Source of the DNA: Octopus sinensis
Taxonomy: Eukaryota
NCBI RefSeq assembly: GCF_006345805.1
Contig: NW_021831889.1
Span: 1-34,394 of the forward strand
Reading direction: 5' to 3'
DNA length: 34,394 nucleotides
How positions within the stretch are numbered: the stretch's first letter is position 1; each line of letters begins with the position of its first letter. Shown in pieces: positions 3,122 to 34,394 of this stretch. Made by a program: the position numbers and the translations under genes. The notes beneath the pieces were generated by a model, which did not search any database, was not told where the DNA came from, and was given only the letters and a program-made list of their open reading frames with translations.

Positions 3122-6100
3122 CTTGGACACGCATGTAGACTACGTGGGTAGAGATAGGAATAGACGGGGATGCAAATGCCTCAGAGACCTGCTCAGACGC
3201 TTTCAACTGTCTGACAGGTTTCGACTAGACCACCCGAATGCGCCAACGTGGACATGGAGCAACCGCATCGGGTCGTCGAGATCGTATCTAGATAGGATAC
3301 TGTGTAGGACAGTAGATAGAGATAGCATAGGATGTCCACAATTCCACATAGTCAGCTACACGGATCACAAACTTGTGACATGTACGCTAGACTTAGGTAA
3401 GACACTTAGGCAGGGTCCCGGATACTGGAAACTAAACGCGTCTTTCCCATCGAGACAAGTTTTCAGAGACCGGATTAGCACACTAGTAAAGAGGGCTTTG
3501 ACGGGAGCCATCATCAACAACAAATGGTGGTTTGCCCTCAAGAGAGCAGTAAAAGCAGAGCGATTAGGTACAGCAAAGCACTAGCCATAGATAGAAATAG
3601 AGTAGAGGGTGAGCTAGTTAAGAAGCTAGAAGAGGCAATAGAAGCGGCATCGCATCCGACGTTTTGGCGGCGAGGTTGCCCTCGACCAACACTTCAACGC
3701 CAAACACGAAGGATGTGCTGTCAGAGCTAGGATGCGTGCTCTAAGGAACGAAGGTGTTGGAGCCGCGAGGAGGCCCGGGTGGCAGAGGCGCAACAGGGCA
3801 ACCAACGCCACCATCGGTCACTGGTAGATGAACAGGGGCGCGAATTGCTCGAGCCAAGTAAAATGTGTGAGGCCTTTCAGCAGCATTTGCCCCGACTGTT
3901 CGGAACGAGTGGAGGGCAAGAACGTAGGGTGGACTTCAGTGCCTACCTACATAGCCTACCACGAACTCTCGACAAGAAAGGCAGGGTGCTGCACGAGGTG
4001 CATAGGCGGCCAGAGTGCGGCGGCGGAAAGGGGAAAGCGATGCAGAAGCTCGAGGGACAAATCCCGGGTTTGGATGGTCTACCCTACGAGCTTTACAATT
4101 GTATGCCAGACTTGTGGAGATCTCTTGGCGGCGGTGTACTGCAACTGGCAGCAAACGGGAGCATTCCTGGTTTTGTGAGCCGAGGAGCCGTAACACTGCT
4201 GAAGAAAGATCTAAACAAGGGAAATGTAATAGATAACTTTAGGCCCATCACTCTGCTTAATGCAGACTTGAAATTTTGGCCAAGGTGCTAGCCAAGAGGT
4301 TGGCGCTTGTCATCGAGAAACTGGTCGACAAGCGCAAACATGCGCCGTGCCAGGCCGGACCATCCATGACAACCTCCATCTGATGCGCTACATCATAGAC
4401 AGGGTAGTTAACGAACCTGGCATGGGTGGGGCCCATGATCAACTTGGATCAATCAAAAGCCTTTGATAGGGTAGACCATCGATACTTGGAGGCAGTCCTG
4501 AGAGCGGCTGGTTTCGGTCCCGTCTTCCGCGGCTGGATAGCTGCCTTGTACAGAGGCATCCTCGGTAATGTCGCGTAAATGGACACCTATCGAGACCTTT
4601 CGACATGCACGGTCGGTCCGTCAGGGATGCCCCCTCTCGGCGCTTCTATACGTATTGACTCTTGAGCCACTACTGCGGAAGCTGGCGACTCTAAGGGGCA
4701 TCCCGCGAGAATTGGGATGCGGGACGAGCGTGTCTGCATACGCGGACGACGTCACCGTCATAGTGTCTAGCCACGAGCACATCGAGCTGGTCGGCGAGAC
4801 ACTGAAAAAAACTACGAAGCGGTGACAGAGAAAAATCAACCGGGAAAAAGTCAGTGGCTTGCGACTAGGCACCTGGAGAAGCAGCCCATGCCGTCCACCA
4901 GCGCCTCCGTCGTGGGGACGCTGGACCGACGGCCCGGTTGAGTTGCTCGGGGTCTGGTTTGGTCCGGACCCTCAAGTGGAGAAGAACTGGAACGAGATAA
5001 CGAGTAGGGTGGTCCTCTCGCCCGGCAATGGGCCGAGAGGAAACTGTCCCTAAAAGGTCGAGCGGAGGTGGCGAACACGTACATCGCGTCCGTCATCTAC
5101 TACCGCCTGACCGTCGTACCTTGTCCCGACCCTACCATCACCAAACTACAACGCATCCTCTTTCGCTTCTTGTGGAAAGGATGCGTCCCGATGGTCAGGC
5201 GATCCATTTGCTGTCAACACCCGTTAAAAGGAGGGCTGGGCATGCCGTGGTTGATGATGCGCAGACACGCGCTGAGACTGCGACATCTCTGGCTCTATGT
5301 AGACGACGGTGAAACAGGTGTGGTCGCCGTTTGTGAGGCACGCTTTCCCGCAGCTCGTCTCCATGACCGAACTGCAGTCGTGGATCAAAAAGAGGCCGAG
5401 GAAGGGGTCGAATGGCACCGCGAGTGTCGCGTTGCTCTCAAGCAACTCTGCCGTCCTGGGTCTCGACCTTAAGTGACTTCACAACAACCAAAGCATTCTA
5501 TAGGGGTTTAGTGGGAGGGGAGGTACGACGACGAGCTCGGGGCGAACCTGGACGTCGACGAGGAGTACCTGACCCGCCTGTTCGGGACGACTTCGGGCCA
5601 GGGCCCATGGACAACTTCCAGAGATCCCTGGCCTGCAGTGCTACGAGAGAAGCGCTACCCGTCGGGATAAGCTCTACAGACACGGCTCGAGCAAACACGG
5701 GGCCGACCTGCCCGAGATGCGGTCAGAGCGACGAAACCGTTCTGCACGCACTCGTTCAGTGTCCAACAATTTCCGACCTGTGGGCTTATGTCGAACAACT
5801 GCTGTCACGGTGGGACGGTCGGTTTATCAGCTGAGTCTATCGTCAATATTGTCACGCCTCCTTCCTCAAACGGGAAGGAAGAGCTATTTTTCATCATCCT
5901 TGTGGCTATGGCGAAGAATGTATCTGGTGGACGCGTCTGAAAGGATTGGAGACAAACACTTTCCTCTCTGGTCAATCTCTCATCAACTTCTTCAAGTACC
6001 ACTTGAAAAGGAAAGTGAGAGTAGAGAGCAAGTTTTGTCTAGCGAATGTTTTAAAAAAAGATGGGTGAATGTAGCAAGAATGGCACGTATGAATGACGAA

Positions 6101-7973: not shown

Positions 7974-7984
7974 CATTTATCTAT

Positions 7985-8135
7985 CTGTGTCACGCTGAAT
8001 CTCCCCTGGGAACTACGTTAAGGTTGCACGTGTCTGTAAAGTGCTCAGCCACCTGCACGTCAATTTCGCGAACAGGCTGTTTCGCCAATCGGATCAACTA
8101 GAACCCTCGTCGTCGTAACCGACGGAGTACCACCA
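7985..8135 (+). mobile_element. 3' half of SINE family C
   Basis: CTGTGTCACGCTGAATCTCCC...AACTACGTTA matches the reverse complement of 18232-18325. Confidence 0.6.
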
Positions 8136-12121: not shown

Positions 12122-13159
12122 TGTCAGAAGGTGATCTTTATATCCAACTTAACATGGATGTCTTGTTGGGACATCGAATACTACGTTGCTAGCCCTGAGA
12201 GATCCTCTCGTACAAGCGCTTGGTGAATAATATTTATAATATGATATATTATAATATATAAAATTAATATGGTTATATAACACTATAATAAATAGTTACT
12301 GCTGAGAGACACTGGGAAATAAAATTAACATACTCTAGAAACAAACGGAAGAGAGTGAAAAGCATAATGTGTACAGAAATATTATATAAAAAAATAATAT
12401 AAAAATATAATTCAAAATAAATGCGGGAATATTCTACATTATCAACAGAAAATCAGATTGAAGGAATACAGGTAGATTAAAACAGTAACACAATTTGAAA
12501 TAATATAAATAATGTCATTATCCACTGAAAATGGTGAAAAATTACAGAAAGTATAACTGATTAAAACGAATTATAGAAAACCATGAACGAATAGCTGAAC
12601 AATATCAAAGGCATACAAAGGAAATGATATAGTTTTGTGTAGATTATATATTATTTTTTCACTGTCATTGTTCTGTCATAGTTTTTGGAGCTGTTATTTT
12701 TCTCTCATTTAATTTATTTTTATTAATTAATTACATTTTAGTTTCTACTATTTTCTGTATAGATGATGAATGCAAAAGTTTATATAATGCATAGAAAGCT
12801 ATATATGATAAATGCAATATATTATATAATGAAAAGGAAATTTAATAGAGACTAGAGTATAATTAAGTAACGAACGCCTGTTGAAAAATTGTCAAAAAAA
12901 CCCCATCAAAACCACCACTGCCATCACTATTACTACCACCACCACCGCCATCACGAACAAATATGGCGAGCATGATAACAATGACATAATATGAAATAAT
13001 AATGTGGAAATATAAAATAAAAAAAAAGAAAAGAAAAAATATATGAATATTATGTATAAAATGAATATTGAAAAATTTCTAGAAAAATTTAAATGTGACT
13101 AATTAAGGAAAACAGATCCAAAATGAATTTAAAATAAACACACACACACACACAGTGAC

Positions 13160-13162
13160 ATA

Positions 13163-13194
<32 letters not shown>

Positions 13195-13221
13195 AATGAT
13201 GATGATGATGATGATGATGAC

Positions 13222-13265
<44 letters not shown>

Positions 13266-13369
13266 CGTTGGCAATGATGATGATGATGATGATGATGATG
13301 ACGACGACGACGATGAGGACGATACTGATGATGATAATGATGATGATGATGATGATGATGATAATGATT

Positions 13370-13400
<31 letters not shown>

Positions 13401-13543
13401 CGATGATGATGATGATGACGTTGGCAATGATGATGATGATAAATGTTGCTATTGTTGGCTGCAGTGGTAGTGGCTGTGGTGATGAGGATTAGTGATGGTG
13501 GAGGTGATGGTGATAGTGATGGTGGTGATGGTGGTGGTGGTGG

Positions 13544-13589
<46 letters not shown>

Positions 13590-14052
13590 GATAGTGGTCG
13601 TGGTGAGTATTATGAATTATGAGGACAATGAAGTTGACGATGACAATGTCGATGATATTGATGATGATGGTGGTGGTGATGATGATGATGATGATGAGGA
13701 GGAGGAGGATGATGAGGACGGTTATAATAAAAGATAACCATCTGAGAGGTTTAAAGGGAAGACAAAACTGAGAAGAAAGAAACATTTAGGTAGCTTGTTA
13801 TGTTACCGTTGGTATCACTGGTGATGACGCTGATGATGGTGTTGTTGTTGTGATGGCGGAGGTGGTGGTAGTGGTAGTACTGGTGGTGGTAGTAGTGGTG
13901 GTGGTTATTGTTGTTGTGATGGCGGTGGTGGTGGTAGTGGTGGTAATGGTAGAGATGTTAGTGGAATGAGTAGTAGCATTAGTGGTGATTGTGGTTAAGG
14001 TAGAGGTGGTGTTGATAGTGATGAACTGCTAGTAGTAGTAATATTAGTAGTA

Positions 14053-14103
<51 letters not shown>

Positions 14104-14270
14104 TGGTAGTACTGGTGGTGGTAGTAGTAGTAGTAGTGGTGGTTGTGGTAGTGGTAGTTGTAGTGATGGGAGGTTGTGGTGGTTGTGGTAGTGGCAGTGG
14201 TAGTAGTAGTAGCAGTAGTTGTAGTAGTAGTGGTACTGGTGGCGGTGGTGGTGGTGGTAGTGTTGGTGTG
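13160..14270. repeat. Compound trinucleotide microsatellite field (GAT, GGT, AGT)
   Basis: Direct reading. It produces spurious poly-M/poly-H/poly-V ORFs. Confidence 0.95.
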
Positions 14271-14294
14271 AAAAAAATATTGAAAAAGTCTCAC

Positions 14295-14333
14295 CAAACA
14301 CATTGGAATGTATTTCATTGAGTGACAATCATC
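14295..14333 (-). CDS. Candidate 39-nt phase-0 micro-exon (DDCHSMKYIPMCL) of an unidentified gene
   Basis: On the minus strand a ~140-nt T-rich tract ends TTTTTTCTTAAG|GAT, and the donor is TTG|GTGAGA. Only the phase-0 frame is open. No homology was recognised. Confidence 0.3.
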
Positions 14334-14495
14334 CTTAAGAAAAAAACAAACAAAAAGACAAATACAGAAGGAAAAGAAAACAAAGAATAATTGGAAGGAA
14401 AAAGAAGAAAAATGGAATAAAATAAAGAAAGCAAATAAAGAAAATACAAAAACTAAAATGAAAACAACAAAAGGAAAAGGCTTCAATTTCTTCTT

Positions 14496-15452
<957 letters not shown>

Positions 15453-15455
<3 letters not shown>

Positions 15456-15665
15456 AGAGCGTAGGACAAAATGCTTAGTGTTTCGTCGGGTTTTACGTTT
15501 TGGGCTCAAATTTTGTTCAGATCCACTTTTGCCCTTCATCCTTTCGGCTTCAATAAAACAATTAAAAACAAGCCGAGCACTGCGATTTATATAACTGACT
15601 GACCCTATCTCCAACCCCAACCCCTGGGAAATATCAGGCCTGTGTGCCTATAATAGAAAACATTA
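15453..15665 (+). mobile_element. Decayed tRNA-derived SINE, family D
   Basis: AAATGCTTAG...TTACGTTTTGGGCTCAAATT...CATCCTTTCGG...TCAGGCCTGTGTGCCTATAATAGAAAACATTATT matches the copies at 34007 and 30201 (reverse complement). Confidence 0.65.
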
Positions 15666-15768
15666 TTATCTGAATGTCTCGGGCCCGTCTGGAGTATCAA
15701 AACATACACCACCACAGGGTAAAAAAAAAGTTATGGCACGGTAGACGCAAGACGCCCGACATAAGAAC

Positions 15769-17110
15769 GTGATGCATCTTGTTAACCACCATTAGGTCCG
15801 GTCTGTTGTGCTCTAGTACCTTGATCTGTTTGGATTGAGAAGTCCTAGAGAATATTTTAAGTCTCCCTTTCCGTCCGTCCCTCTCTGCGGTTTGTAGTCA
15901 TGCCACGTCTGGCCTCTCTCTAGCCCCCATTTTTCGTATGGATTGAGAAGTCGCAGATAATTTTTTAAGTCTCCCTTTCAGTCCGTCCCTCTCTGCGGTT
16001 TGTAGTCATACCACGTCTGGCCTCTCTCTAGCCCCCATTTTTCGTATGGATTGAGAAGTCCCAGATAATTTTTTAAGTCTCCCTTTCCGTCCGTCCCTCT
16101 CTGCGGTTTGTAGTCATACCACGTCTGGCCTCTCTCTAGCCCCCATTTTTCGTATGGATTGAGAAGTCCCAGATAATTTTTTAAGTCTCCCTTTCCGTCC
16201 GTACCTCTCTGCGGTTTATAGTCATACCACGTCTGGCCTCTCTCTAGCCCCCATTTTTCGTATGGATTGAGAAGTCCCAGATAATTTTTTAAGTCTCCCT
16301 TTCCGTCCGTCCCTCTCTGCGGTTTGTAGTCATACCACGTCTGGCCTCTCTCTAGCCCCCATTTTTCGTATGGATTGAGAAGTCCCAGATAATTTTTTAA
16401 GTCTCCCTTTCCGTCCGTCCCTCTCTGCGGTTTGTAGTCATACCACGTCTGGCCTCTCTCTAGCCCCCATTTTTCGTATGGATTGAGAAGTCCCAGATAA
16501 TTTTTTAAGTCTCCCTTTCCGTCCGTCCCTCTCTGCGGTTTGTAGTCATACCACGTCTGGCCTCTCTCTAGCCCCCATTTTTCGTATGGATTGAGAAGTC
16601 CCAGATAATTTTTTAAGTCACCCTTTCCGTCCGTCCCTCTCTGCGGTTTGTAGTCATGCCACGTCTGGCCTCTCTCTAGCCCCCATTTTTCGTATGGATT
16701 GAGAAGTCCCAGATAATTTTTTAAGTCTCCCTTTCCGTCTGTACCTCTCTGCGGTTTATAGTCATACCACGTCTGGCCTCTCTCTAGCCCCCATTTTTCG
16801 TATGGATTGAGAAGTCCCAGATAATTTTTTAAGTCTCCCTTTCCGTCCGTACCTCTCTGCGGTTTATAGTCATACCACGTCTGGCCTCTCTCTAGCCCCC
16901 ATTTTTCGTATGGATTGAGAAGTCCCAGATAATTTTTTAAGTCTCCCTTTCCGTCCGTCCCTCTCTGCGGTTTGTAGTCATACCACGTCTGGCCTCTCTC
17001 TAGCCCCCATTTTTCGTATGGATTGAGAAGTCCCAGATAATTTTTTAAGTCTCCCTTTCCGTCCGTCCCTCTCTGCGGTTTGTAGTCATACCACGTCTGG
17101 CCTCTCTCTA
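15769..17110 (-). mobile_element. R4/Dong-like (RLE-type) non-LTR retrotransposon fragment whose 5' part is tandemly amplified
   Basis: The last unit continues (with frameshifts) as IL*DFSIQTDQ-VLEHNRPDLMVVNK, the WDFxIQTD...HNRPD motif opening the restriction-like endonuclease of R4/CRE/NeSL-type elements. The upstream EKWGLERGQTWYDYKP matches the region just before it in such elements. Confidence 0.8.
15831..17110 (-). repeat. 108-bp minisatellite, 11 full units plus 1 partial, nearly identical
   Basis: The period was measured directly (GCCCCCAT at 15923 and 16031). One minus frame reads (ERGQTWYDYKPQRGTDGKGDLKNYLGLLNPYEKWGL)n until a GGA>TGA change at 15978-15980. Confidence 0.97.
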
Positions 17111-17162
17111 CTACTACTACTACTACTACTACTGCTGCTACTACTACTACTACTACTACTGT

Positions 17163-17251
<89 letters not shown>

Positions 17252-17398
17252 TTACTACTACTACTACTACTACTACAACCACCATCACCACTACTACTAC
17301 GACTACTACCACCACCACCACCACCACCACCACCACCACTACTACTACTAAATAATAATGATAATAATAATAATAATAAATATTATTTATTATTATTA

Positions 17399-17492
<94 letters not shown>

Positions 17493-17508
17493 CATCATTA
17501 TTATTATT
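17109..17508. repeat. Compound microsatellite (TAC)n-(ACC)n-(AAT)n-(ATT)n
   Basis: Direct reading. The AAT-to-ATT polarity switch is at ~17380. Confidence 0.95.
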
Positions 17509-17850
17509 AAAGGCAAGGAAGAAAATACTTGTAGACTAATGGATGTAAATGTTCCCACTGATAAAAGTGTATCTGTCAAGGAATTTGACAAATTAAGTAA
17601 AATACAAAGATCTGGAAATTGAAGTACAAAAGATGTGGCATCTCAAAGCAGGAATTGTTCCTGTTAGTGTAGGTGCCCTAGGCGTGATAAAAGAGGGATG
17701 TCAGAAACAACTAAGCAACATCCCAGGAGAACCATGTCACAAAGAAATCCCAAAGATTGTGCTGACAGGTGCTGCCCATATGTTTCGAAAAACCCTGTCA
17801 GTCTAACAAGGTACCTCAACTTAAGTACCTAGTTCAACTGAATCTTAATG
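17509..17850 (+). mobile_element. 3' end of an R4/Dong-like RLE-type non-LTR retrotransposon
   Basis: KGKEENTCRLMDVNVPTDKSVSVKEFDKLSK(+1 frameshift ~17602)YKDLEIEVQKMWHLKAGIVPVSVGALGVIKEG...LTGAAHMFRKTLSV* (stop 17804-17806). This carries the RLE signature D-x-x-x-P-x-D, K..K..KY..L and VPVxxGALG. Confidence 0.85.
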
Positions 17851-17862
17851 TATATATATATA

Positions 17863-17901
<39 letters not shown>

Positions 17902-17904
17902 AAA

Positions 17905-18205
17905 TATTGAATTTCTAAATCTCTCGTAGAGACATGTACGGTGGTGGGGCGATAGAATGGTTGTATACTGTCAATCTAACAAGAACGTGACAGTAGGGGG
18001 TACACCACCGTTGTATAGCCCTAGGAGGTATCGAACGCCTCCTGACAGCTTCAACACATTTTTTCCCTGTTTCCTTATATACATATACGAAGGGGAGACA
18101 AACACCCCCAACCGCCGGAACCGCATCTAGGGACACCGTGTTTCAGGATCATTGTCCTTCATCGGCCTAGAGTAGCAGACACCGGTCGGCTGGTGATATT
18201 TGCCT
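17905..18205 (-). mobile_element. Short GC-richer ORF-less element carrying a hammerhead-like motif
   Basis: Unique block after (TA)n with several hairpins and the HHR-like motif at 18126-18171. Confidence 0.45.
18126..18171 (-). ncRNA. Type I hammerhead-like motif with a U4>C core variant
   Basis: Reverse complement: TCTAGG CCGATGA AGGA-CAATGA-TCCT GAAA CA-CGG-TG TC / CCTAGA. It has a perfect 6-bp stem I, a 4-bp stem II, a short stem III and a GUC triplet. Confidence 0.6.
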
Positions 18206-18231
18206 GGACTTCGTATCTGTATATATGTAAA

Positions 18232-18494
18232 CTCAGTGAAAATTAGCGTGCTAGTGACTGAGCAATCAACAGACACACGTACCTCTAACGTAGTTCACAG
18301 GGAAATTCAGCGTGACACAGAGTGTGACAAGGCTGGCCCTTTCAAATACAGGAACAACTCACTTTTGCCAGCTGAGTGGATAGAGCAACGTGAAATAAAG
18401 TGTCTTGCTCAAGGACACAACGCGTCGCTAGGAATCGAACTCACGACCTTACAATCGCGAGCCGAATGCCCTAACCACTAAGCCACGCGCCTTC
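18232..18494 (-). mobile_element. tRNA-derived SINE, family C
   Basis: Reverse complement head GAAGGCGCGTGGCTTAGTGGTTAG...GAGTTCGATTCC (A and B boxes), then CCTTGAGCAAGACACTT. The tail is shared with 7985-8135. Confidence 0.8.
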
Positions 18495-18540
18495 TATATA
18501 TATATATATATATATATCTTTACTAAGCCAATCGCCTTCC

Positions 18541-18576
<36 letters not shown>

Positions 18577-18583
18577 ATATTTA

Positions 18584-18659
<76 letters not shown>

Positions 18660-18663
18660 ATAT

Positions 18664-18830
18664 TTACGACGAATTTCTTCCAGTTTCCGTCTACCAAATC
18701 CACTCACAAGGCTTTGGTCGGTCCGAGGCTATAGTAGAAGACACTCACCCAAGGTGCCACGCAGTGGGACTGAACCCGGAACCATGTGGGTGAGAAGCTA
18801 ACTTCTTAACACACAGCCACATCTGCGCCT
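18664..18830 (-). mobile_element. SINE family A head, truncated at the internal microsatellite
   Basis: Matches 10190-10354. Confidence 0.85.
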
Positions 18831-19448
18831 ATGAGTAAGAATTTTAAGATTTTGTAAATAGAGAGCAGGTAAAAAAATATATATATGTTGTACGACTTTT
18901 CCTTCTTGTTCTTCGGTTTACTATTCCAGCTTCTAATCAAACCACGATTGATCTTGAAATGATTATCTCCCTTACAATTACTGGCCACCAGGGAACACTA
19001 TCTTTTCTTTTCTTTACGTTATCAGACAAATCTTATTCTGTATTAGAATCGATAGCCATATTGTAGGTGTGTAAAAGTATGGAAAAATAGAAAATTTAAT
19101 AGAAAACTGACTTTCTAAAACTCAATATAGCAGTCATTGTATTTCGGTGAATGTGATATTCGCCGTCTTTATTTTCAATATTTCATGTGCACGGACTTAG
19201 AGGAAATGTTATAATTGTCTTAATTTGGTTTTTCTTCGAAACACGTCCACCTCATCTGATTACAAAATTCTGCTGGTATTTTCAAGAAATATCTGCCAAA
19301 GTTATGTTCCGTCTTTATTTATTATTTTCCGCAAATCAAATCGTTTATTTTTTCCGTTCCATAGCCACATCACTAAAGCCACAAACCGCTTTGCTGTTTT
19401 TCGAATAATCCTCAATTTTCTGCTATCGTCGCTGCTTTCATCTTTGCT

Positions 19449-19590
19449 TTCTGAGCTCAAATACCGCCGAGGTCGACTTTACCTTTCATTCTTTCGGAGT
19501 TGATGAATTAAGTACCAGTTAAACACTGAAGTCGTCTAGTCTTCTCCCTCCAAATTTCAGACCTTCTGCCTCGCGTAGAAAATATTATTA
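19449..19590 (+). mobile_element. SINE family D, 3' part
   Basis: CTGAGCTCAAATACCGCCGAGGTCGACTTT...AGTACCAG...GTAGAAAATATTATTATT. Confidence 0.7.
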
Positions 19591-19699
19591 TTATTCATGT
19601 ACACTCATCAGATTAAACGGTTGGAAAAGCAAAACATCGGGCTACAACATGTTGCCTTAGATGCCAAGAACACTCCTATCGAGTTACAGCAAATAACCT

Positions 19700-21360
<1,661 letters not shown>

Positions 21361-21448
21361 TAGGACTATAATTACTTATCAAATCTGTTTTCTCAAATTT
21401 TCGTAAACACGATGATATAGATTATTATATAATACTATGTTATCTTAT

Positions 21449-21767
21449 TCTTTTATTGGTGTCAGTCATGTGACTGCGGTCAAGCTGGAGCCTCGCCTTG
21501 AAGGGACTTAGTGGAACAAATCGACCCCAGGACTTATTCTTTGTATCAGTCTCTTTATGTCGAGCTGCTATGTTTGGGGGGAAGGGGTATGAGTCGATTA
21601 CATCGACCCCACCCCCCACTTTTCAACTGGTTCTTGTTCCATCGACGCTGAAAGGATTGAAAGTCGAAGTCGACCTCGGCGGAATTCGAACTCAGAACTC
21701 AGCGACGGGCGAAATACGGCTAAGCATTTCCTGCAGTGGGCCAACGATTCTGCCAACTTGCTGCCTT
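21449..21767 (-). mobile_element. SINE A tail fragment (21449-21572) abutting a SINE D copy (21573-21767)
   Basis: Matches the reverse complement of ~9950-10089 and of 34007-34290 respectively. Confidence 0.7.
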
Positions 21768-21777
21768 AATGATAATA

Positions 21778-21824
<47 letters not shown>

Positions 21825-21921
21825 AATAATAATAATAATAATAATAATAATAGTAATGATGATGATGATGATGATGATGATAATGATGATGATGATGATA
21901 ATGATGATGATGATGATAATA

Positions 21922-21978
<57 letters not shown>

Positions 21979-21998
21979 TAATAATGATGATGATGATG

Positions 21999-22061
<63 letters not shown>

Positions 22062-22108
22062 TAATAATGATGATGATGATGATAATAATAATAATAATAA
22101 TAATGATA

Positions 22109-22149
<41 letters not shown>

Positions 22150-22258
22150 AATAAAAATAATAATAATAATGATAATGATGATGATAATGATGAAGATGAT
22201 GATGATGACGACGACGACGACAACGACGACAACAACAACAACAACAGCAACAACAGCA
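21768..22258. repeat. (GAT)n/(AAT)n/(AAC)n microsatellite field
   Basis: Direct reading. Confidence 0.95.
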
Positions 22259-22418
22259 TCGAAAACTACCTTAGGAATGGGAACCCAGGTTCGAAATTTC
22301 CCCGAGACACCTGATGAAGGCTGGAGGGTATATCAGCCGAAACGTTGTGTTAACAACAAACAAGATGAGGACAAATATCCTTCAAATGTAAATAATGTAA
22401 ATAATGTGCCTACTGTCA
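22259..22418 (+). mobile_element. Short ORF-less element with a hammerhead motif, ending in (TGTAAATAA)2
   Basis: Starts immediately after (AAC)n and contains the HHR at 22306-22351. The tandem 9-nt tail resembles a retroposon 3' end. Confidence 0.55.
22306..22351 (+). ncRNA. Minimal type I hammerhead ribozyme motif, complete core
   Basis: GACAC CTGATGA A GGCTG-GAGGGTATAT-CAGCC GAAA CG TT / GTGTT gives stem I ACAC:GTGT, a 5-bp stem II, a palindromic ACGT stem III and a GUU triplet. Confidence 0.75.
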
Positions 22419-23287
22419 CGCAAAGGACAAATTCGGTTATTAGCTGAGTCCATTTTCAAACTCAACCGCCGCCTTCCTTTGACCAGGAAGGAAAGGCTGC
22501 ATTTATCTACTTAGTGGTTTTACCGAAAGAGGGTTTTACCAAAAGAGATTATGCGATGGTCCAGTCTGAAAGGACGGACGATGGATACCTTTCCTGTTGG
22601 TCAATACCTCATCAACTGAGGGAAAAAAGTGCTGAATTGGGGTGAGAGGTGAAGAAGAGAGGCTTGCGTGGTCCGAGTGAACTGCCTGTAAACTGAGGTG
22701 TCGTGTATGGAGAGAGGGTATTTTCCAGAGTGATCAGGATCAGTGGCGTTTATCGGAGGACTTCTTCGATCAGATCTCGGAAGTCTCCCCACTTTTGGGG
22801 AATTATTTCTTGCTTCTAATATTTATTTCTTCTTTTTCTTTCTTCATCACATTTTACTGCTTACATGCATTTACGTTTGAACAGATGGTCAGAGAAAATA
22901 GGCATGAACCCTAGTTTAGTGCAGCACCAGAAAAGTGATATTTGGTACAACTAGGATACCTTAAGAACAGTAGTATCACTAGGGGTGGGAGCATGTGCCC
23001 CGGGCGCCGATTGAAGGGGACGCAGAATTGACCATAATACAATAAGCTTGAACTCCTTTCATAAAATTGCAATTGTAAAGATGGATCTCCAGCTTATTGT
23101 TTTATGCTGTTATTGAAGGTAAACACAATAAAATGGTTGCCTATATTCATGTCTGGACATTTTTACAAAGGGTGTCAAAAAATTACAGGTGGTACCGAAC
23201 CGGCAGGTAAATGAACCCTGGTAAAGTATTTACTCCTAAAATATTGCTTTAAAATATTAATTACTTGTAACAAATAGGAGGAGGAGG

Positions 23288-23782
23288 AGACCCCCTTCGG
23301 TCATGAATGACCATGGGATTGCACCTAGAAAGTTACCCTCCGAGGCACAAGTCCGGGAAAGGTTGTTTACGGAAGACAAGTAGTCGCTCATGCATACCAG
23401 CCTCCGCTCTCCTTGCCATTATATGTGCAGAGAGTAAAAGGCTAAAGAGGCCCTTCAGGCATGAATGACCATGGGATTGCACCTAGAAAGTTACCCTCCG
23501 AGGAACAAGTCCGGGTAAGGTTGTTTATGGAAGGCCAGCAGTCTCCCATGCATACCGGCCTGCCCTCTCCACACCACTGATGTTATCCAAGGGAAAGGCA
23601 AAGGGGCCGATACAGCTTGGCACTTGTGACATCGCAACTCGTTTCTACAGCTGAGTGAACTGGAGCAATGTGAAATAAAGTGTCTTGCTCAAGAACACAA
23701 CATGCAACTCGGTCCAGGAATCGAACTCACAACCTCAAGATCGTAAGCTCGACGCTCTAACCACTGAGCCATGCGCCTTCAC
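23288..23782 (-). mobile_element. tRNA-derived SINE, family B (23448-23782), plus a tandem extra tail copy (23288-23417)
   Basis: Reverse complement head GAAGGCGCATGGCTCAGTGGTTAG...GAGTTCGATTCC and CTTGAGCAAGACACTT. The ~125-bp tail CATGAATGACCATGGGATTGCACCTAGAAAGTTACCCTCCGAGG is present twice. Confidence 0.85.
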
Positions 23783-23949
23783 TTGCAGCAAATAAGTACT
23801 ATATAAAATCGTGTAATTGAGGCGAGGGTTGGCATTTTTGCGGGTTGCCTCGGGATGCGGTTTACCCTCTCTATGCCATTGCTTACGAAAGTTCTTGGCA
23901 TCTAAAGTTACATATTGTAGCCCGATGTTAGTGCAGTGTAGTGTATCGG

Positions 23950-24043
23950 CGATCTCGGCGGGATTTGAACTTAGAACGTAAAGACGGATGAAAAGACGCG
24001 AAGCGTTTTGTCCGGTGTGCTAACGTTTCTGCCACCATCGCCA
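23950..24043 (-). mobile_element. SINE family D head fragment
   Basis: CTCGGCGGGATTTGAACTTAGAACGTAAAGACGG...GTGCTAACGTTTCTGCCA. Confidence 0.7.
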
Positions 24044-24079
24044 CTTTAAATTAATTTTGTATTAATTATATTGCTGTCA

Positions 24080-24327
24080 CCCGGCGACGGCAACGTGTGT
24101 GTTGTGTGTACGTGTGTGTAATGTGTGTACGTGTGTGTGTGTGTGCGCGCGTATGTGTATGCGTGTGCGCATGTTGTGGCTGTGAGTGTGTGTACCTGTG
24201 TGTATGTGTGTGCGTGTGTGAGGTTGTGTGTGTGTGTGTGTGTAGGGCAAGCGTGTGAAAAGTGGGTAGATAATGACATTAAAAGATATTCACATAATCT
24301 AATGGTATATTGCATGATGGTGGCTGC

Positions 24328-24375
<48 letters not shown>

Positions 24376-24693
24376 AGCTGACATTTATTGTTGCTAATAT
24401 AGTTGTTATTATTGCTGTTGTTTGTTTTTCCATCTCAACTACTTTCCTACGCGTCCCTCTTCCTCATCTACCTTCTGTTTCTTTTTCTTCCACACTTTCT
24501 TCTTCTTCTTCTTCTTCTTCTTCTTCTTTTTCTTCTTCTTCTTCTTCTTCTTCTTCTTCTTCTTCTTCTTCTTTCTTTTCCTTCTTGTTCTTTTTCTTCT
24601 TCTTTTCCTTCTTGTTCTTTTTCTTCTTCTTCTTGTTCTTTTCCTTCTTGTTCTTTTCTTCTTCTTCTACTTCTCCTCGTCCTCATTCATCTC

Positions 24694-24725
<32 letters not shown>

Positions 24726-25614
24726 CTTCTTCTTCTTCTTCTTCTTCTTCTTCTCATTCATCTCTTCTTCTCCCCATTCATCTTCTTCTTCTTCTTTTCC
24801 TCCTCCTCTTCCTTCTTCTTCATCTTCTTCTTTCTTTTCCTCCTCTTCCTTCTTCTTCTTGTTCTTCTACTTCCCCATTCTTCCCCTTCTTCCCTTTCTT
24901 CTTTTTCCTTCTTTCTTCGCCCCCTTCTCCTTCTACACTTTTTCCTTCTTTCTTCGCCCCTTCTCCTTCTTCTACACTTTCGTCTCTTCCCGCTCCCCTT
25001 TCTCACACTCCTTCTTCAGCATTTCATGCTGGTGCTTACTTTGATTAAAATATCTTTAATTAGTTTTAATTAATTATCTATTTCGCTTTTGCAACTTAAA
25101 TTAAATTGCAAATGAAACATGTACACATGCATGTTTATAAGTATGTGTATATACAAATGTGTGTATATGCACATACATATATATGTCAGCGTATACATAT
25201 ACATATAGGTACATACATAAACAGTGTATTTATATATATATATATATATATATATGTGTTTGTGTCTGGTTGGTAATATAATTATATGTGTGTGTGTGTA
25301 TTATATAGGTATATACACACACACACACACGCATGCACACACACACATATATATTATACAACTATATATATACATATATACACTCCTACCTATATATATG
25401 TATATATATATATAGCATATACATATACACACACAGATACATGTTTGTAGGACTAATCTCACACACAAAGGAGAGCAAAAAAGATATATATATATATATA
25501 TTGAATATACATACATATAAATACTTGCATTTGTACATACATTTATGCTTATATACGAACGTATATATACTTATTTTGCAATTTACCTATCAATCCATAT
25601 TATATGTATATATG

Positions 25615-26204: not shown

Positions 26205-26405
26205 TTTCGCTTTCGTTTGTTTCAGTCATTGGACGGCAGCCATGAGGGGTGTGTGTAGGTGTGGGGTGTGTTGGGGGGAGGTTCCCTGCCTTGAAGGGTT
26301 TTAGTCGAAGAAATAAAGAACACAACGCAATGCTCCACCTGGGAATCGAACCCACGATCTCGTAATCATGAGCGCAACGCCATATCCACCGAGCCATGCG
26401 TCTTC
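26205..26405 (-). mobile_element. Internally deleted SINE: B/C-type head joined to an A-type tail
   Basis: 26310-26405 matches the heads at 18400-18494 and 23680-23782. 26215-26300 matches the A tail (TTTCAGTCATT...GCCATG...GCCTTGAAGGG). Confidence 0.55.
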
Positions 26406-26679
26406 ATATATATTCATAATATACGTAAGTGTTTGCCAGTGGGTGTGCATGCATTTGTGTGTGCGCCCGAGTGTGTGTGCGTGTGTGTTGTGTGTGTATG
26501 CAAATGAAAATCTCTTGTCAAAGAGGCCGGGGTGGGTCATCATGACCAGCTGACAAAACGCTACAGGGAAGATCAGGATGATGTTAACCTTTTCTACAGG
26601 CGAAACTCAGAGAAATCTCAAAGATCGCAAAATATAACGTACACCCCCATCTCTATCCTTGTATGCATTCTACGTATAC

Positions 26680-34006: not shown

Positions 34007-34394
34007 AGCCGGCAAGCTGGCAGAAACGTTAGCACGCCGAACGAAATGCTTAGCGTTATTTAGTCTGTCTTTACATTCTGAGTTCAAATTCCGCCAAATT
34101 CTGGGGAGGGGGCCCAGTCGATTAGATCGACCCAAGTACGCAACTATTACTTAAGTAATCGCCCCAGAAAGGATGAAAGGCTATGTCTGAGTTCAAATTC
34201 CGCCGAGGTCGACTTTGCCATTCATCCTTTCGGGGTCGATTAAATAAGTACCAGTTACGCACTGGGGTCGATGTAATCAACTTAATCCGTTTGTCTGTTC
34301 TTGTTTGTTCCCTCTATGTTTAGACCCTTGTGGGTAGTAAAGAAATAGGTATTTCGTCTGCTGTTACGTTCTGAGTTTAAATTCTGCCGCAATA
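34007..34394 (+). mobile_element. SINE family D with an inverted internal insert (34096-34185) and a further head fragment at the window end
   Basis: Head GCAAGCTGGCAGAAACGTTAGCACGCC...GAGTTCAAATTCCGCC. The 19-bp TCTGAGTTCAAATTCCGCC is duplicated at 34077-34095 and 34186-34204. Confidence 0.8.

What the first reader, a model, noticed from the sequence alone, without database searches (positions are those of the whole stretch)
15831..17110. 108-bp minisatellite born from a retrotransposon RLE coding region and still open as a 36-aa tandem repeat
The unit is a slice of R4/Dong-like ORF sequence: EKWGLERGQTWYDYKPQR in the ancestral frame, with WDFSIHT hidden in the shifted frame. The last unit runs on into the unamplified DFSIQTDQ-VLEHNRPDLMVVNK. 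About 12 near-identical units give 10+ uninterrupted 36-aa repeats, joined in frame to upstream microsatellite codons (537-aa ORF with no ATG start). This captures satellite genesis from a TE ORF. A unit length divisible by 3 with one open frame can arise by chance, so coding function is not claimed.
Basis: partly seen in the sequence, partly recalled or inferred. Interest (0 to 1): 0.7.

Follow-up and report, generated by a model that had tools for sequence, protein, structure and literature searches.

The report
Minisatellite made from dead Dong-like retrotransposon
A 108-base piece of a broken, long-dead Dong/R4-type jumping gene has been copied head-to-tail about twelve times, giving an ordinary non-coding minisatellite whose open reading frame is most likely an accident.

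Summary
Positions 15831-17110 are 11.9 head-to-tail copies of a 108-bp unit (98% identical, no indels), and one minus-strand frame is open. The unit alone matches a profile of one retrotransposon family (24.5 bits; best of 2000 shuffles 7.1), and the array runs into unamplified ...DFSIQTDQ/VLEHNRPDLMVVNK of the same protein.

Full-length relatives have a reverse transcriptase, a CCHC knuckle and a C-terminal restriction-like endonuclease. They have no AP endonuclease, their closest solved structures are R2 proteins, and all five related copies examined end in (TAA)n.

"Still open" needs correcting. The open frame follows the ancestral frame for only about 18 of 36 codons, and every unit carries a frameshift and a TAA stop in the ancestral frame. 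An open frame is expected by chance. A nonsense change lies in unit 2, no protein like it was found, and the predicted fold is poor. In-frame ATGs do exist, inside microsatellite.

A second Dong-like fragment lies on the plus strand at 17509-17806. It belongs to another subfamily, so a single inverted insertion is rejected. Transposon-derived tandem arrays are well documented, so this is a new example of a known kind and of low interest.

The parts
15831..17110 (-). 108-bp tandem array: 11 full units plus one unit cut at position 92. The unit derives from the linker between the CCHC knuckle and the RLE 'RPD' motif of a Dong/R4-like LINE protein.
   Evidence: TRF; in-register comparison of units; unit against the family profile, 24.5 bits, 0 of 2000 shuffles
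15778..15830 (-). Unamplified continuation of the same element fragment: (DFSI)QTDQ, a frameshift, then VLEHNRPDLMVVNK. Homology ends here, so the rest of the RLE and the 3' end are missing.
   Evidence: Translations; tblastn against L001 copies; profile alignment to positions 48-98
15981..17642 (-). Stop-to-stop open stretch of 554 codons. It runs antisense over the neighbouring element tail, then through I/Y/V runs read from microsatellites, then 9 complete and 2 partial 36-aa units. In-frame ATGs occur only inside microsatellite.
15978..15980 (-). TGA stop that ends the open frame. It arose by a G>T change on the minus strand (window 15980) in unit 2.
17108..17509 (.). Microsatellite block that truncates the array and separates it from the second fragment: (CTA)n 17108-17350, (AAT)n 17351-17379, (ATT)n 17381-17509.
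   Evidence: TRF; sequence. The junction reads ...GGCCTCTCTCTA|CTACTA..., where the unit would continue ...TCTCTA|GCCCCC.
17509..17806 (+). Second, independent Dong-like fragment. It is the C-terminal RLE part (KGKEENTCRLMDVNVPTDKSVSVKEFDKLSK / YKDLEIEVQKMWHLKAGIVPVSVGALG...RKTLSV, then stop) with one frameshift near 17600 and a TAA stop at 17804-17806. It belongs to a different subfamily from the array's source.
   Evidence: tblastn E about 1e-28; profile positions 98-193, 82.5 bits; identity by subfamily
17807..17899 (+). Short 3' UTR remnant and (TA)n tail (17851-17899) of the plus-strand fragment.

Best explanation
This is a single-locus, non-coding minisatellite. An old, already inactivated fragment of a Dong/R4-type non-LTR retrotransposon lay beside a trinucleotide-microsatellite block, which is the usual landing site of such elements. 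A 108-bp stretch of that fragment encodes the linker between the CCHC zinc knuckle and the RPD motif of the restriction-like endonuclease.

That stretch was duplicated once and then expanded to about 12 copies by replication slippage and/or unequal sister-chromatid exchange (inferred). The interior units stay nearly identical through recent expansion or continuing exchange, while the edge units drift. Growth of the (CTA)n microsatellite later cut the far end of the array.

The 36-codon open frame is a by-product. Part of it is the old element frame and part is a shifted frame that happens to lack stops.

Shown: the array, its homology to the element, its continuity with unamplified element sequence, the RLE-type identity of the family, and the broken ancestral frame. 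Inferred: the order of events and the amplification mechanism.
For: - Array: 11.9 copies, 98% identical, no indels.
- Homology: the unit alone scores 24.5 bits against the family profile, best of 2000 shuffles 7.1. Unit plus flank scores 45.8 bits, E=2.5e-13, aligned to profile positions 48-98, which lie between the knuckle and the RLE core. It is 53-57% identical to relatives such as P0105, P0119 and P0085.
- Family: 39,042 relatives at E<=1e-3, full length 1100-1300 aa. RVT_1 in 30 of 30 and zf-RVT in 26 of 30; none has Exo_endo_phos or an N-terminal zinc finger.
- Solved structures: the family profile hits R2 proteins at E=7e-71, with separate matches to the CCHC (5e-6) and the RLE (1.3e-3). 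L1 ORF2p matches only over the RT.
- Tails: 5 of 5 related copies end in (AAT)n, matching Dong's (TAA)n target (PMC7998251).
- Amplification after decay: every unit shares the same frameshift and the same TAA in the ancestral frame, yet interior units differ by 0-3 bases. Edge units 1 and 2 carry 4 and 2 private changes.
- Open frame: expected by chance.
- Protein evidence: no Pfam family, no protein with the repeat among the candidates of a search of 5.8 billion proteins whose query held 28 aa of the unit, and pLDDT 49 for six units.
- Precedent: transposon-ORF-derived tandem arrays are documented (PMC9659126).
Against: - Four of the five distinct substitutions among interior units are synonymous in the open frame (P about 0.008 to 0.03). 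That is not expected for neutral DNA, though the sample is tiny.
- Uniqueness of the locus could not be tested, because no genome of the source organism was searchable.
- Copy number rests on the assembly alone.
- No clear microhomology was seen at the founding duplication junction.
Confidence: 0.8

Rival explanations
1. The array is, or is becoming, protein-coding. A 36-aa tandem-repeat protein or exon was born from transposon-derived DNA and is kept open by selection.
For: One frame is open through 9 complete and 2 partial units. Four of the 5 interior substitutions are synonymous in that frame, against 1 of 5 and 0 of 5 in the other two (binomial P=0.008; 5 of 10 with the edge units, P=0.037).
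Against: - An open frame is expected by chance (81% of shuffles).
- The frame is a chimera of ancestral and shifted frames, and a nonsense change sits in unit 2.
- The only ATGs lie in microsatellite, and the upstream 'protein' is runs of I, Y and V.
- No Pfam family, and no similar protein among the candidates.
- No exact product on record.
- The AlphaFold model is poor: pLDDT 49, pTM 0.28.
- The synonymous excess rests on five events and a post-hoc split into interior and edge units.
Confidence: 0.04
2. The array was not born here. It is one copy of a dispersed satellite, or the internal tandem region of a non-autonomous mobile element derived from Dong, and it arrived by transposition or segmental duplication.
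For: Transposons often carry and spread internal arrays (PMC12628747, PMC9659126). The genome could not be searched, so this is untested.
Against: At one edge the array runs without a break into the next residues of the same element protein, as expected for amplification in place. No second copy lies in the 34-kb window. A 27-mer of the unit has no match in the metagenome collection, which is a weak test.
Confidence: 0.1
3. The tandem copies were made by the element's reverse transcriptase during integration, through repeated template jumps or slippage, not by later DNA slippage or exchange.
For: R2-type reverse transcriptases are known to jump between templates (my own knowledge, not tested here). 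The array lies at the 5' end of the fragment, which is the last part to be copied.
Against: All units share a frameshift and a stop that disable the element's frame. They are 98-100% alike, while about 165 bp of the source fragment carries three disabling lesions. This points to amplification long after insertion. Edge units are more diverged than interior ones, as in arrays that evolve by exchange.
Confidence: 0.03
4. The array fragment and the plus-strand tail at 17509-17806 are two halves of one insertion whose 5' part was inverted, either by twin priming or by a later inversion.
For: The two pieces lie in opposite orientation and meet at the same element coordinate. The minus piece covers profile positions 48-98 and the plus piece 98-193, which is the topology of a 5'-inverted LINE insertion.
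Against: They belong to different subfamilies. The minus piece is 53-57% identical to P0105-type relatives and 33% to P0001-type. The plus piece is 57-62% identical to P0001-type and 31-37% to P0105-type. About 400 bp of microsatellite lies between them.
Confidence: 0.03

Closest known systems
Tandem arrays derived from LINE coding sequence (PROsat and Pvc20 from L1 ORF2; chicken HinfI/SCR1 from CR1 ORF2 and 3'UTR), and the roughly 7,000 human minisatellites derived from transposons (PMC9659126)
   Same: A slice of a retrotransposon, here coding sequence, is amplified head-to-tail. Unamplified element sequence survives at the edge.
   Different: The source is an RLE-type (Dong/R4-like) element rather than L1 or CR1. 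Only one short array of about 1.3 kb is known, so it is a minisatellite, not a demonstrated genome-wide satellite.
Dong/R4 clade of RLE non-LTR retrotransposons (Bombyx Dong, nematode R4, fish Rex6; Dong-R4 families of Octopus vulgaris, PMC13282606)
   Same: RT, CCHC knuckle and C-terminal PD..D..K endonuclease, with no AP endonuclease and no N-terminal zinc finger. Relatives have (TAA)n tails, and the fragment sits among trinucleotide microsatellites.
   Different: The window holds only about 55 codons of one copy, heavily mutated and amplified, and about 100 codons of another. Clade placement by RT phylogeny was not done. The plus-strand copy ends in (TA)n, not (TAA)n.
R2 retrotransposon proteins (PDB 9nl2, 9nl3, 9dou, 8gh6)
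   Same: These are the closest solved structures to the family. Homology runs through the RT, the CCHC knuckle and the RLE.
   Different: [quoted passage not shown] This family has no detectable zinc finger, and its copies end in (TAA)n.

Membership tests
RLE-bearing non-LTR retrotransposons (R2/R4/NeSL/CRE/HERO group) | Reverse transcriptase closest to that of R2-type elements | tested here: met
   Tested on full-length relatives of the window fragments. RVT_1 in 30 of 30. R2 proteins are the best PDB hits, E=4e-28 for a single sequence and 7e-71 for the profile, against 1e-7 and 1e-33 for L1 ORF2p. The window itself holds no RT of this element.
RLE-bearing non-LTR retrotransposons (R2/R4/NeSL/CRE/HERO group) | CCHC knuckle (CX2-3CX7-8HX4C) after the RT, followed by a C-terminal PD-(D/E)XK-like endonuclease | tested here: met
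   Relatives read CRFCdqydetidHlvsgC, that is CX2CX8HX4C with R after the first C (motif as in PMC5678591). The profile aligns to the R2 knuckle (i-E 5e-6) and to the R2 RLE, RPDI..iiDvavP..EK..KY (i-E 1.3e-3). In the window, RPD lies on the minus fragment and MDVNVP...KEFDKLSKYKDL on the plus fragment.
RLE-bearing non-LTR retrotransposons (R2/R4/NeSL/CRE/HERO group) | No apurinic/apyrimidinic (AP) endonuclease domain | tested here: met
   No Exo_endo_phos hit in any of 30 full-length relatives at E<=1.
Dong/R4 clade | Placement inside the clade in an RT phylogeny with reference R4, Dong, Rex6, HERO, NeSL, R2 and CRE sequences | not testable with these tools
   No Repbase or Dfam reference sequences were available.
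Dong/R4 clade | Insertion into (TAA)n microsatellites (Dong) or rDNA (R4) | tested here: met
   Five of 5 related copies (L001 x3, L002, L003) end in a 70-150-nt 3'UTR followed by (AAT)n, as PMC7998251 describes for Dong in molluscs, insects and cnidarians. In the window the fragments flank an (AAT)n/(ATT)n/(CTA)n block, but the plus-strand copy ends in (TA)n and the repeat orientations are not canonical.
Dong/R4 clade | No N-terminal zinc fingers; at most a diverged SANT/Myb-like domain | tested here: inconclusive
   No zinc-finger or Myb family hit in the N-termini of 30 relatives, which fits the description in PMC7998251. The Myb-like domain itself was not detected at Pfam sensitivity. The alignment consensus shows spaced W/Y residues only.
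Transposon-derived minisatellite / satellite DNA | Head-to-tail units homologous to a transposon, with unamplified transposon sequence at an array edge | tested here: met
Transposon-derived minisatellite / satellite DNA | Presence at many loci or high abundance (satellite), or copy-number polymorphism (VNTR) | not testable with these tools
   No genome, reads or population data of the source organism. There is one array only in the 34-kb window.
Protein-coding tandem repeat | Intact ORF with a credible start, homologues or expression, a foldable repeat, and purifying selection | tested here: not met
   Stop in unit 2, and ATGs only in microsatellite. No Pfam family and no similar protein. pLDDT 49. 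The only positive hint is the synonymous excess, P about 0.008 to 0.04 on 5-10 events.
5'-inverted LINE insertion (twin priming) | The inverted and direct segments come from one element and are contiguous in element coordinates | tested here: not met
   They are contiguous in coordinates but come from different subfamilies.

The most novel reading that the evidence does not exclude
The 36-aa repeat frame is under purifying selection. Under this reading the array is a young protein-coding, or at least translated, tandem repeat recruited from a frame-shifted retrotransposon endonuclease linker, which would explain why 4 of 5 interior substitutions are synonymous.
Probability: 0.03. Interest if true: 0.6.

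Novelty: new member of a known kind. Interest (0 to 1): 0.2.

Why it matters
The locus is a tidy worked example of how a minisatellite starts from a dead transposon fragment. The founding sequence, the amplified slice and the untouched continuation are all still readable, and the source is an RLE-type (Dong/R4-like) element rather than the usual L1, CR1 or Alu. It does not change what is known about the origin of satellites. Its practical value is for annotation: the 537-554-codon open frame should not be called a gene, and the array is a candidate variable-number marker in this genome.

Tried and rejected
1. Twin priming or inversion of one insertion. It looked attractive because the minus and plus fragments meet at profile position 98. 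I rejected it because the two pieces belong to different subfamilies.
2. Pfam on the bridged fragment and on the whole open stretch: no family.
3. PDB search with a 362-aa C-terminal relative alone: only a chance anti-CRISPR hit. The full-length profile was needed.
4. Exact look-up of the 537-aa product in public assemblies: nothing on record.
5. Scan of metagenome contigs for a 27-mer of the unit: 0 matches. This is a weak test for an animal genome.
6. tRNA and Rfam scans of the window: nothing at curated thresholds. The permissive scan gave only a 20-bit tRNA-like hit in a neighbouring SINE-like repeat, plus low-complexity noise.
7. The bacterial promoter/terminator scan is irrelevant to an animal genome and was not used.
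8. AlphaFold on six units: low confidence, so no fold search was run.
9. The original Dong paper (PMC309301) is not held. Dong's (TAA)n target is cited from PMC7998251 and PMC3774820 instead.
10. The source organism could not be identified with the tools. A cephalopod origin is my recollection of the SINE-like repeats only.

Full report
**1. The observation**

Tandem Repeats Finder reports one array at 15831-17110: period 108, 11.9 copies, 98% matches, no indels, score 2455. It is the only long-period array in a window that is otherwise crowded with di-, tri- and tetranucleotide microsatellites.

Cut in register, units 3, 5, 6, 7 and 11 are identical to the consensus. Units 4 and 10 share two variants, and unit 9 has those two plus one more. 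Unit 8 has two variants. Edge units 1 and 2 have four and two private changes. Unit 12 stops at position 92, where (CTA)n begins.

No other copy of the unit lies in the window.

On the minus strand one frame reads YEKWGLERGQTWYDYKPQRGTDGKGDLKNYLGLLNP in each unit, and the +1 frame reads KIIWDFSIHT. The last minus-strand unit runs into DFSIQTDQ, and after a frameshift into VLEHNRPDLMVVNK.

The ORF tool lists 15978..17591, 537 aa. The stop-to-stop open stretch is 17642..15981, 554 codons, with nine complete and two partial units.

Two details in the finding are inexact:
- In-frame ATGs do exist (17498, 17495, 17441, 17402, 17285), all inside microsatellite.
- The frame is closed by a substitution-made TGA in unit 2.

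**2. What the unit is**

A conceptual translation of the fragment and its neighbour found eight short proteins from large eukaryotic contigs (E down to 8e-39). One of them, P0001, begins with a CX2CX8HX4C knuckle and continues ...EKWYEHK...ILWDFPINTD...NRPDIVIKD....

A locus holding that protein (L001) carries three related copies. One reads CEKGGFERASKWYEQKLEGVLENEDYKLLWDFTIQCDRMVEARRPDIVFVDK, which lines up residue for residue with the window's EKWGLERGQTWYDYKPQ / EGRTERET*KIIWDFSIQTDQ / VLEHNRPDLMVVNK.

I built a profile from 61 family C-termini and scored the window pieces against it:

| Piece | Bits | Note |
|---|---|---|
| Unit plus flank | 45.8 | E=2.5e-13; profile positions 48-98 |
| Unit alone, bridged over its one frameshift | 24.5 | best of 2000 shuffles 7.1 |

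The unit is therefore a piece of this element's coding sequence. It covers the stretch between the zinc knuckle and the RPD motif.

**3. What the element family is**

A 362-aa relative found 981 proteins at E<=1e-10. A 626-aa relative found 39,042 cluster representatives at E<=1e-3, with full-length members of 1100-1300 aa.

Thirty full-length members were scanned against Pfam. All have RVT_1 and 26 have zf-RVT. None has an Exo_endo_phos domain or an N-terminal zinc finger.

Their profile hits the solved R2 retrotransposon proteins at E about 7e-71. There are separate matches over the RT, the CCHC knuckle (i-E 5e-6) and the restriction-like endonuclease (i-E 1.3e-3; RPDI..iiDvavP..aeKiekYkeL against R2 KPDL..vvDVTV..AEKVRHYKDL). 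L1 ORF2p matches over the RT only. This is an RLE-type non-LTR retrotransposon.

The literature divides such elements into the CRE, R2, R4, NeSL and HERO clades (PMC4640811). [quoted passage not shown]

All five related copies I examined (L001 x3, L002, L003) end in a short 3'UTR followed by (AAT)n. A tree with reference elements could not be built here.

Dong-R4 is also reported as the most abundant recently active RLE LINE in Octopus vulgaris (PMC13282606). That matters only if my unverified impression is right that the window comes from a cephalopod.

**4. Why the open frame is not special**

The ancestral frame changes within the unit. EKWGLERGQTWYDYKPQ lies in the open frame, but EGRTERET*KIIWDFSI lies one base over and holds a TAA where relatives have Tyr. 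Only about half of the 36 codons are read in the element's own frame, and the element's frame is broken twice in every unit.

Chance and the other tests point the same way:
- Shuffled units have at least one of six frames open in tandem 81% of the time, and a given frame 11%. Divisibility by three adds a factor of 1/3.
- The long 'N-terminus' is I, Y and V runs read from (ATT)n, (AAT)n and (CTA)n.
- The repeat matches no Pfam family.
- No similar protein appeared among the candidates of a search of 5.8 billion proteins whose query held 28 residues of the unit.
- No such product is on record.
- Six units give a poor AlphaFold model, pLDDT 49 and pTM 0.28.

One observation goes the other way. 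Four of the five distinct substitutions among interior units are synonymous in the open frame, where 21% is expected. That gives P=0.008, or roughly 0.03 with a transition bias. With the edge units it is 5 of 10, P=0.037. The sample is tiny, the split into interior and edge units is post hoc, and the edge units carry a nonsense and three missense changes. I record it as unexplained and not as evidence of coding.

**5. Order of events (inferred)**

All units share the same frameshift and TAA yet differ by 0-3 bases, while the roughly 165-bp source fragment carries three disabling lesions. Amplification therefore most likely followed the decay of the element copy.

Edge units are more diverged than interior ones. 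Unit 1 even turns the family's invariant Trp codon into TAG. This is the usual pattern for arrays that grow and homogenise by slippage or unequal exchange.

The far end of the array is cut at ...CTCTCTCTA|CTACTA..., that is by growth of (CTA)n. I found no convincing microhomology at the founding junction.

**6. The neighbour and a rejected idea**

Just beyond the microsatellites, on the plus strand, 17509-17806 encodes the next part of the same kind of protein, KGKEENTCRLMDVNVPTDKSVSVKEFDKLSK / YKDLEIEVQKMWHLKAGIVPVSVGALG...RKTLSV*. It has one frameshift and is followed by a short UTR and (TA)n (82.5 bits, profile positions 98-193).

The two fragments thus meet at the same element coordinate in opposite orientation, which is the topology of a 5'-inverted (twin-primed) insertion. 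However, they differ in subfamily:

| Fragment | Identity to P0105-type relatives | Identity to P0001-type relatives |
|---|---|---|
| Minus (array source) | 53-57% | 33% |
| Plus (17509-17806) | 31-37% | 57-62% |

They are two different elements. The likeliest reason for their proximity is the family's preference for the same microsatellite target. L001 likewise holds three different copies side by side. The coincidence of the break points remains unexplained.

**7. Comparison with what is known, and verdict**

Tandem arrays derived from transposons, including from LINE ORF2 (PROsat, Pvc20, chicken HinfI) and thousands of human minisatellites, are well documented (PMC9659126, PMC12628747).

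This locus is a clean new instance with an RLE-type source. It is not a new kind of thing. Uniqueness of the locus, copy-number polymorphism and expression could not be tested with the tools available.

Interest is low.

Noticed in passing
window 17509-17899 (+): A second Dong-like fragment (C-terminal RLE part, one frameshift, stop at 17804-17806, then (TA)n) from a different subfamily. It begins at the same element coordinate (profile position about 98) at which the array's source fragment ends, and it lies in the opposite orientation. The coincidence of the break points is unexplained.
   Followed up: yes
window 15831-17110 (-), unit positions 37, 45, 60, 63, 75: Four of the five distinct substitutions among interior units are synonymous in the single open frame (P about 0.008 to 0.03). 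The edge units carry a nonsense and three missense changes. The sample is too small to interpret.
   Followed up: partly
window 13100-25000: A very dense run of long trinucleotide microsatellites: (ATG)n, (GTG)n, (TAG)n, (TAT)n, (TTC)n, (CAC)n, (CAT)n, (CTA)n, (AAT)n, (ATT)n, (CCA)n, (ATA/ATG)n, (GCT)n. GC skew is strongly positive in 13-15 kb and negative from about 15 kb to 22 kb. (TAA)-type repeats are the known target of Dong elements.
   Followed up: no
window 3123-5834 (+): A G+C-rich stretch (50-56%, against 25-45% elsewhere) with broken ORFs of a different LINE. Exo_endo_phos is only a sub-threshold hint (E=0.045, 13.9 bits), there is a zf-RVT match (E=8e-5), and the RT-like motifs are by eye only. 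It may be an AP-endonuclease-type LINE remnant.
   Followed up: partly
window 18240-18515 (-); also 23648-23780, 7984-8066, 26339-26423: An interspersed SINE-like repeat (76-80% identity between copies). Its head gives a full-length but sub-threshold tRNA match at 18421-18490 (20 bits, E=0.86). From memory it resembles abundant octopus SINEs; this was not tested.
   Followed up: partly
window 15457-15730 (+): A probable retroposon that ends in A9 at 15722-15730, lying about 50 bp from the point where the array's source fragment loses homology. A 37-bp piece recurs at 34214-34250 (81%).
   Followed up: no
L001 2710-6642 and 9756-10613: In a related locus from another organism, three Dong-like copies of different subfamilies sit head-to-tail within 4 kb, each with its own (AAT)n tail. 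This is consistent with repeated insertion into one microsatellite target. A separate 32-bp tandem array (26.9 copies) lies 3 kb downstream.
   Followed up: partly
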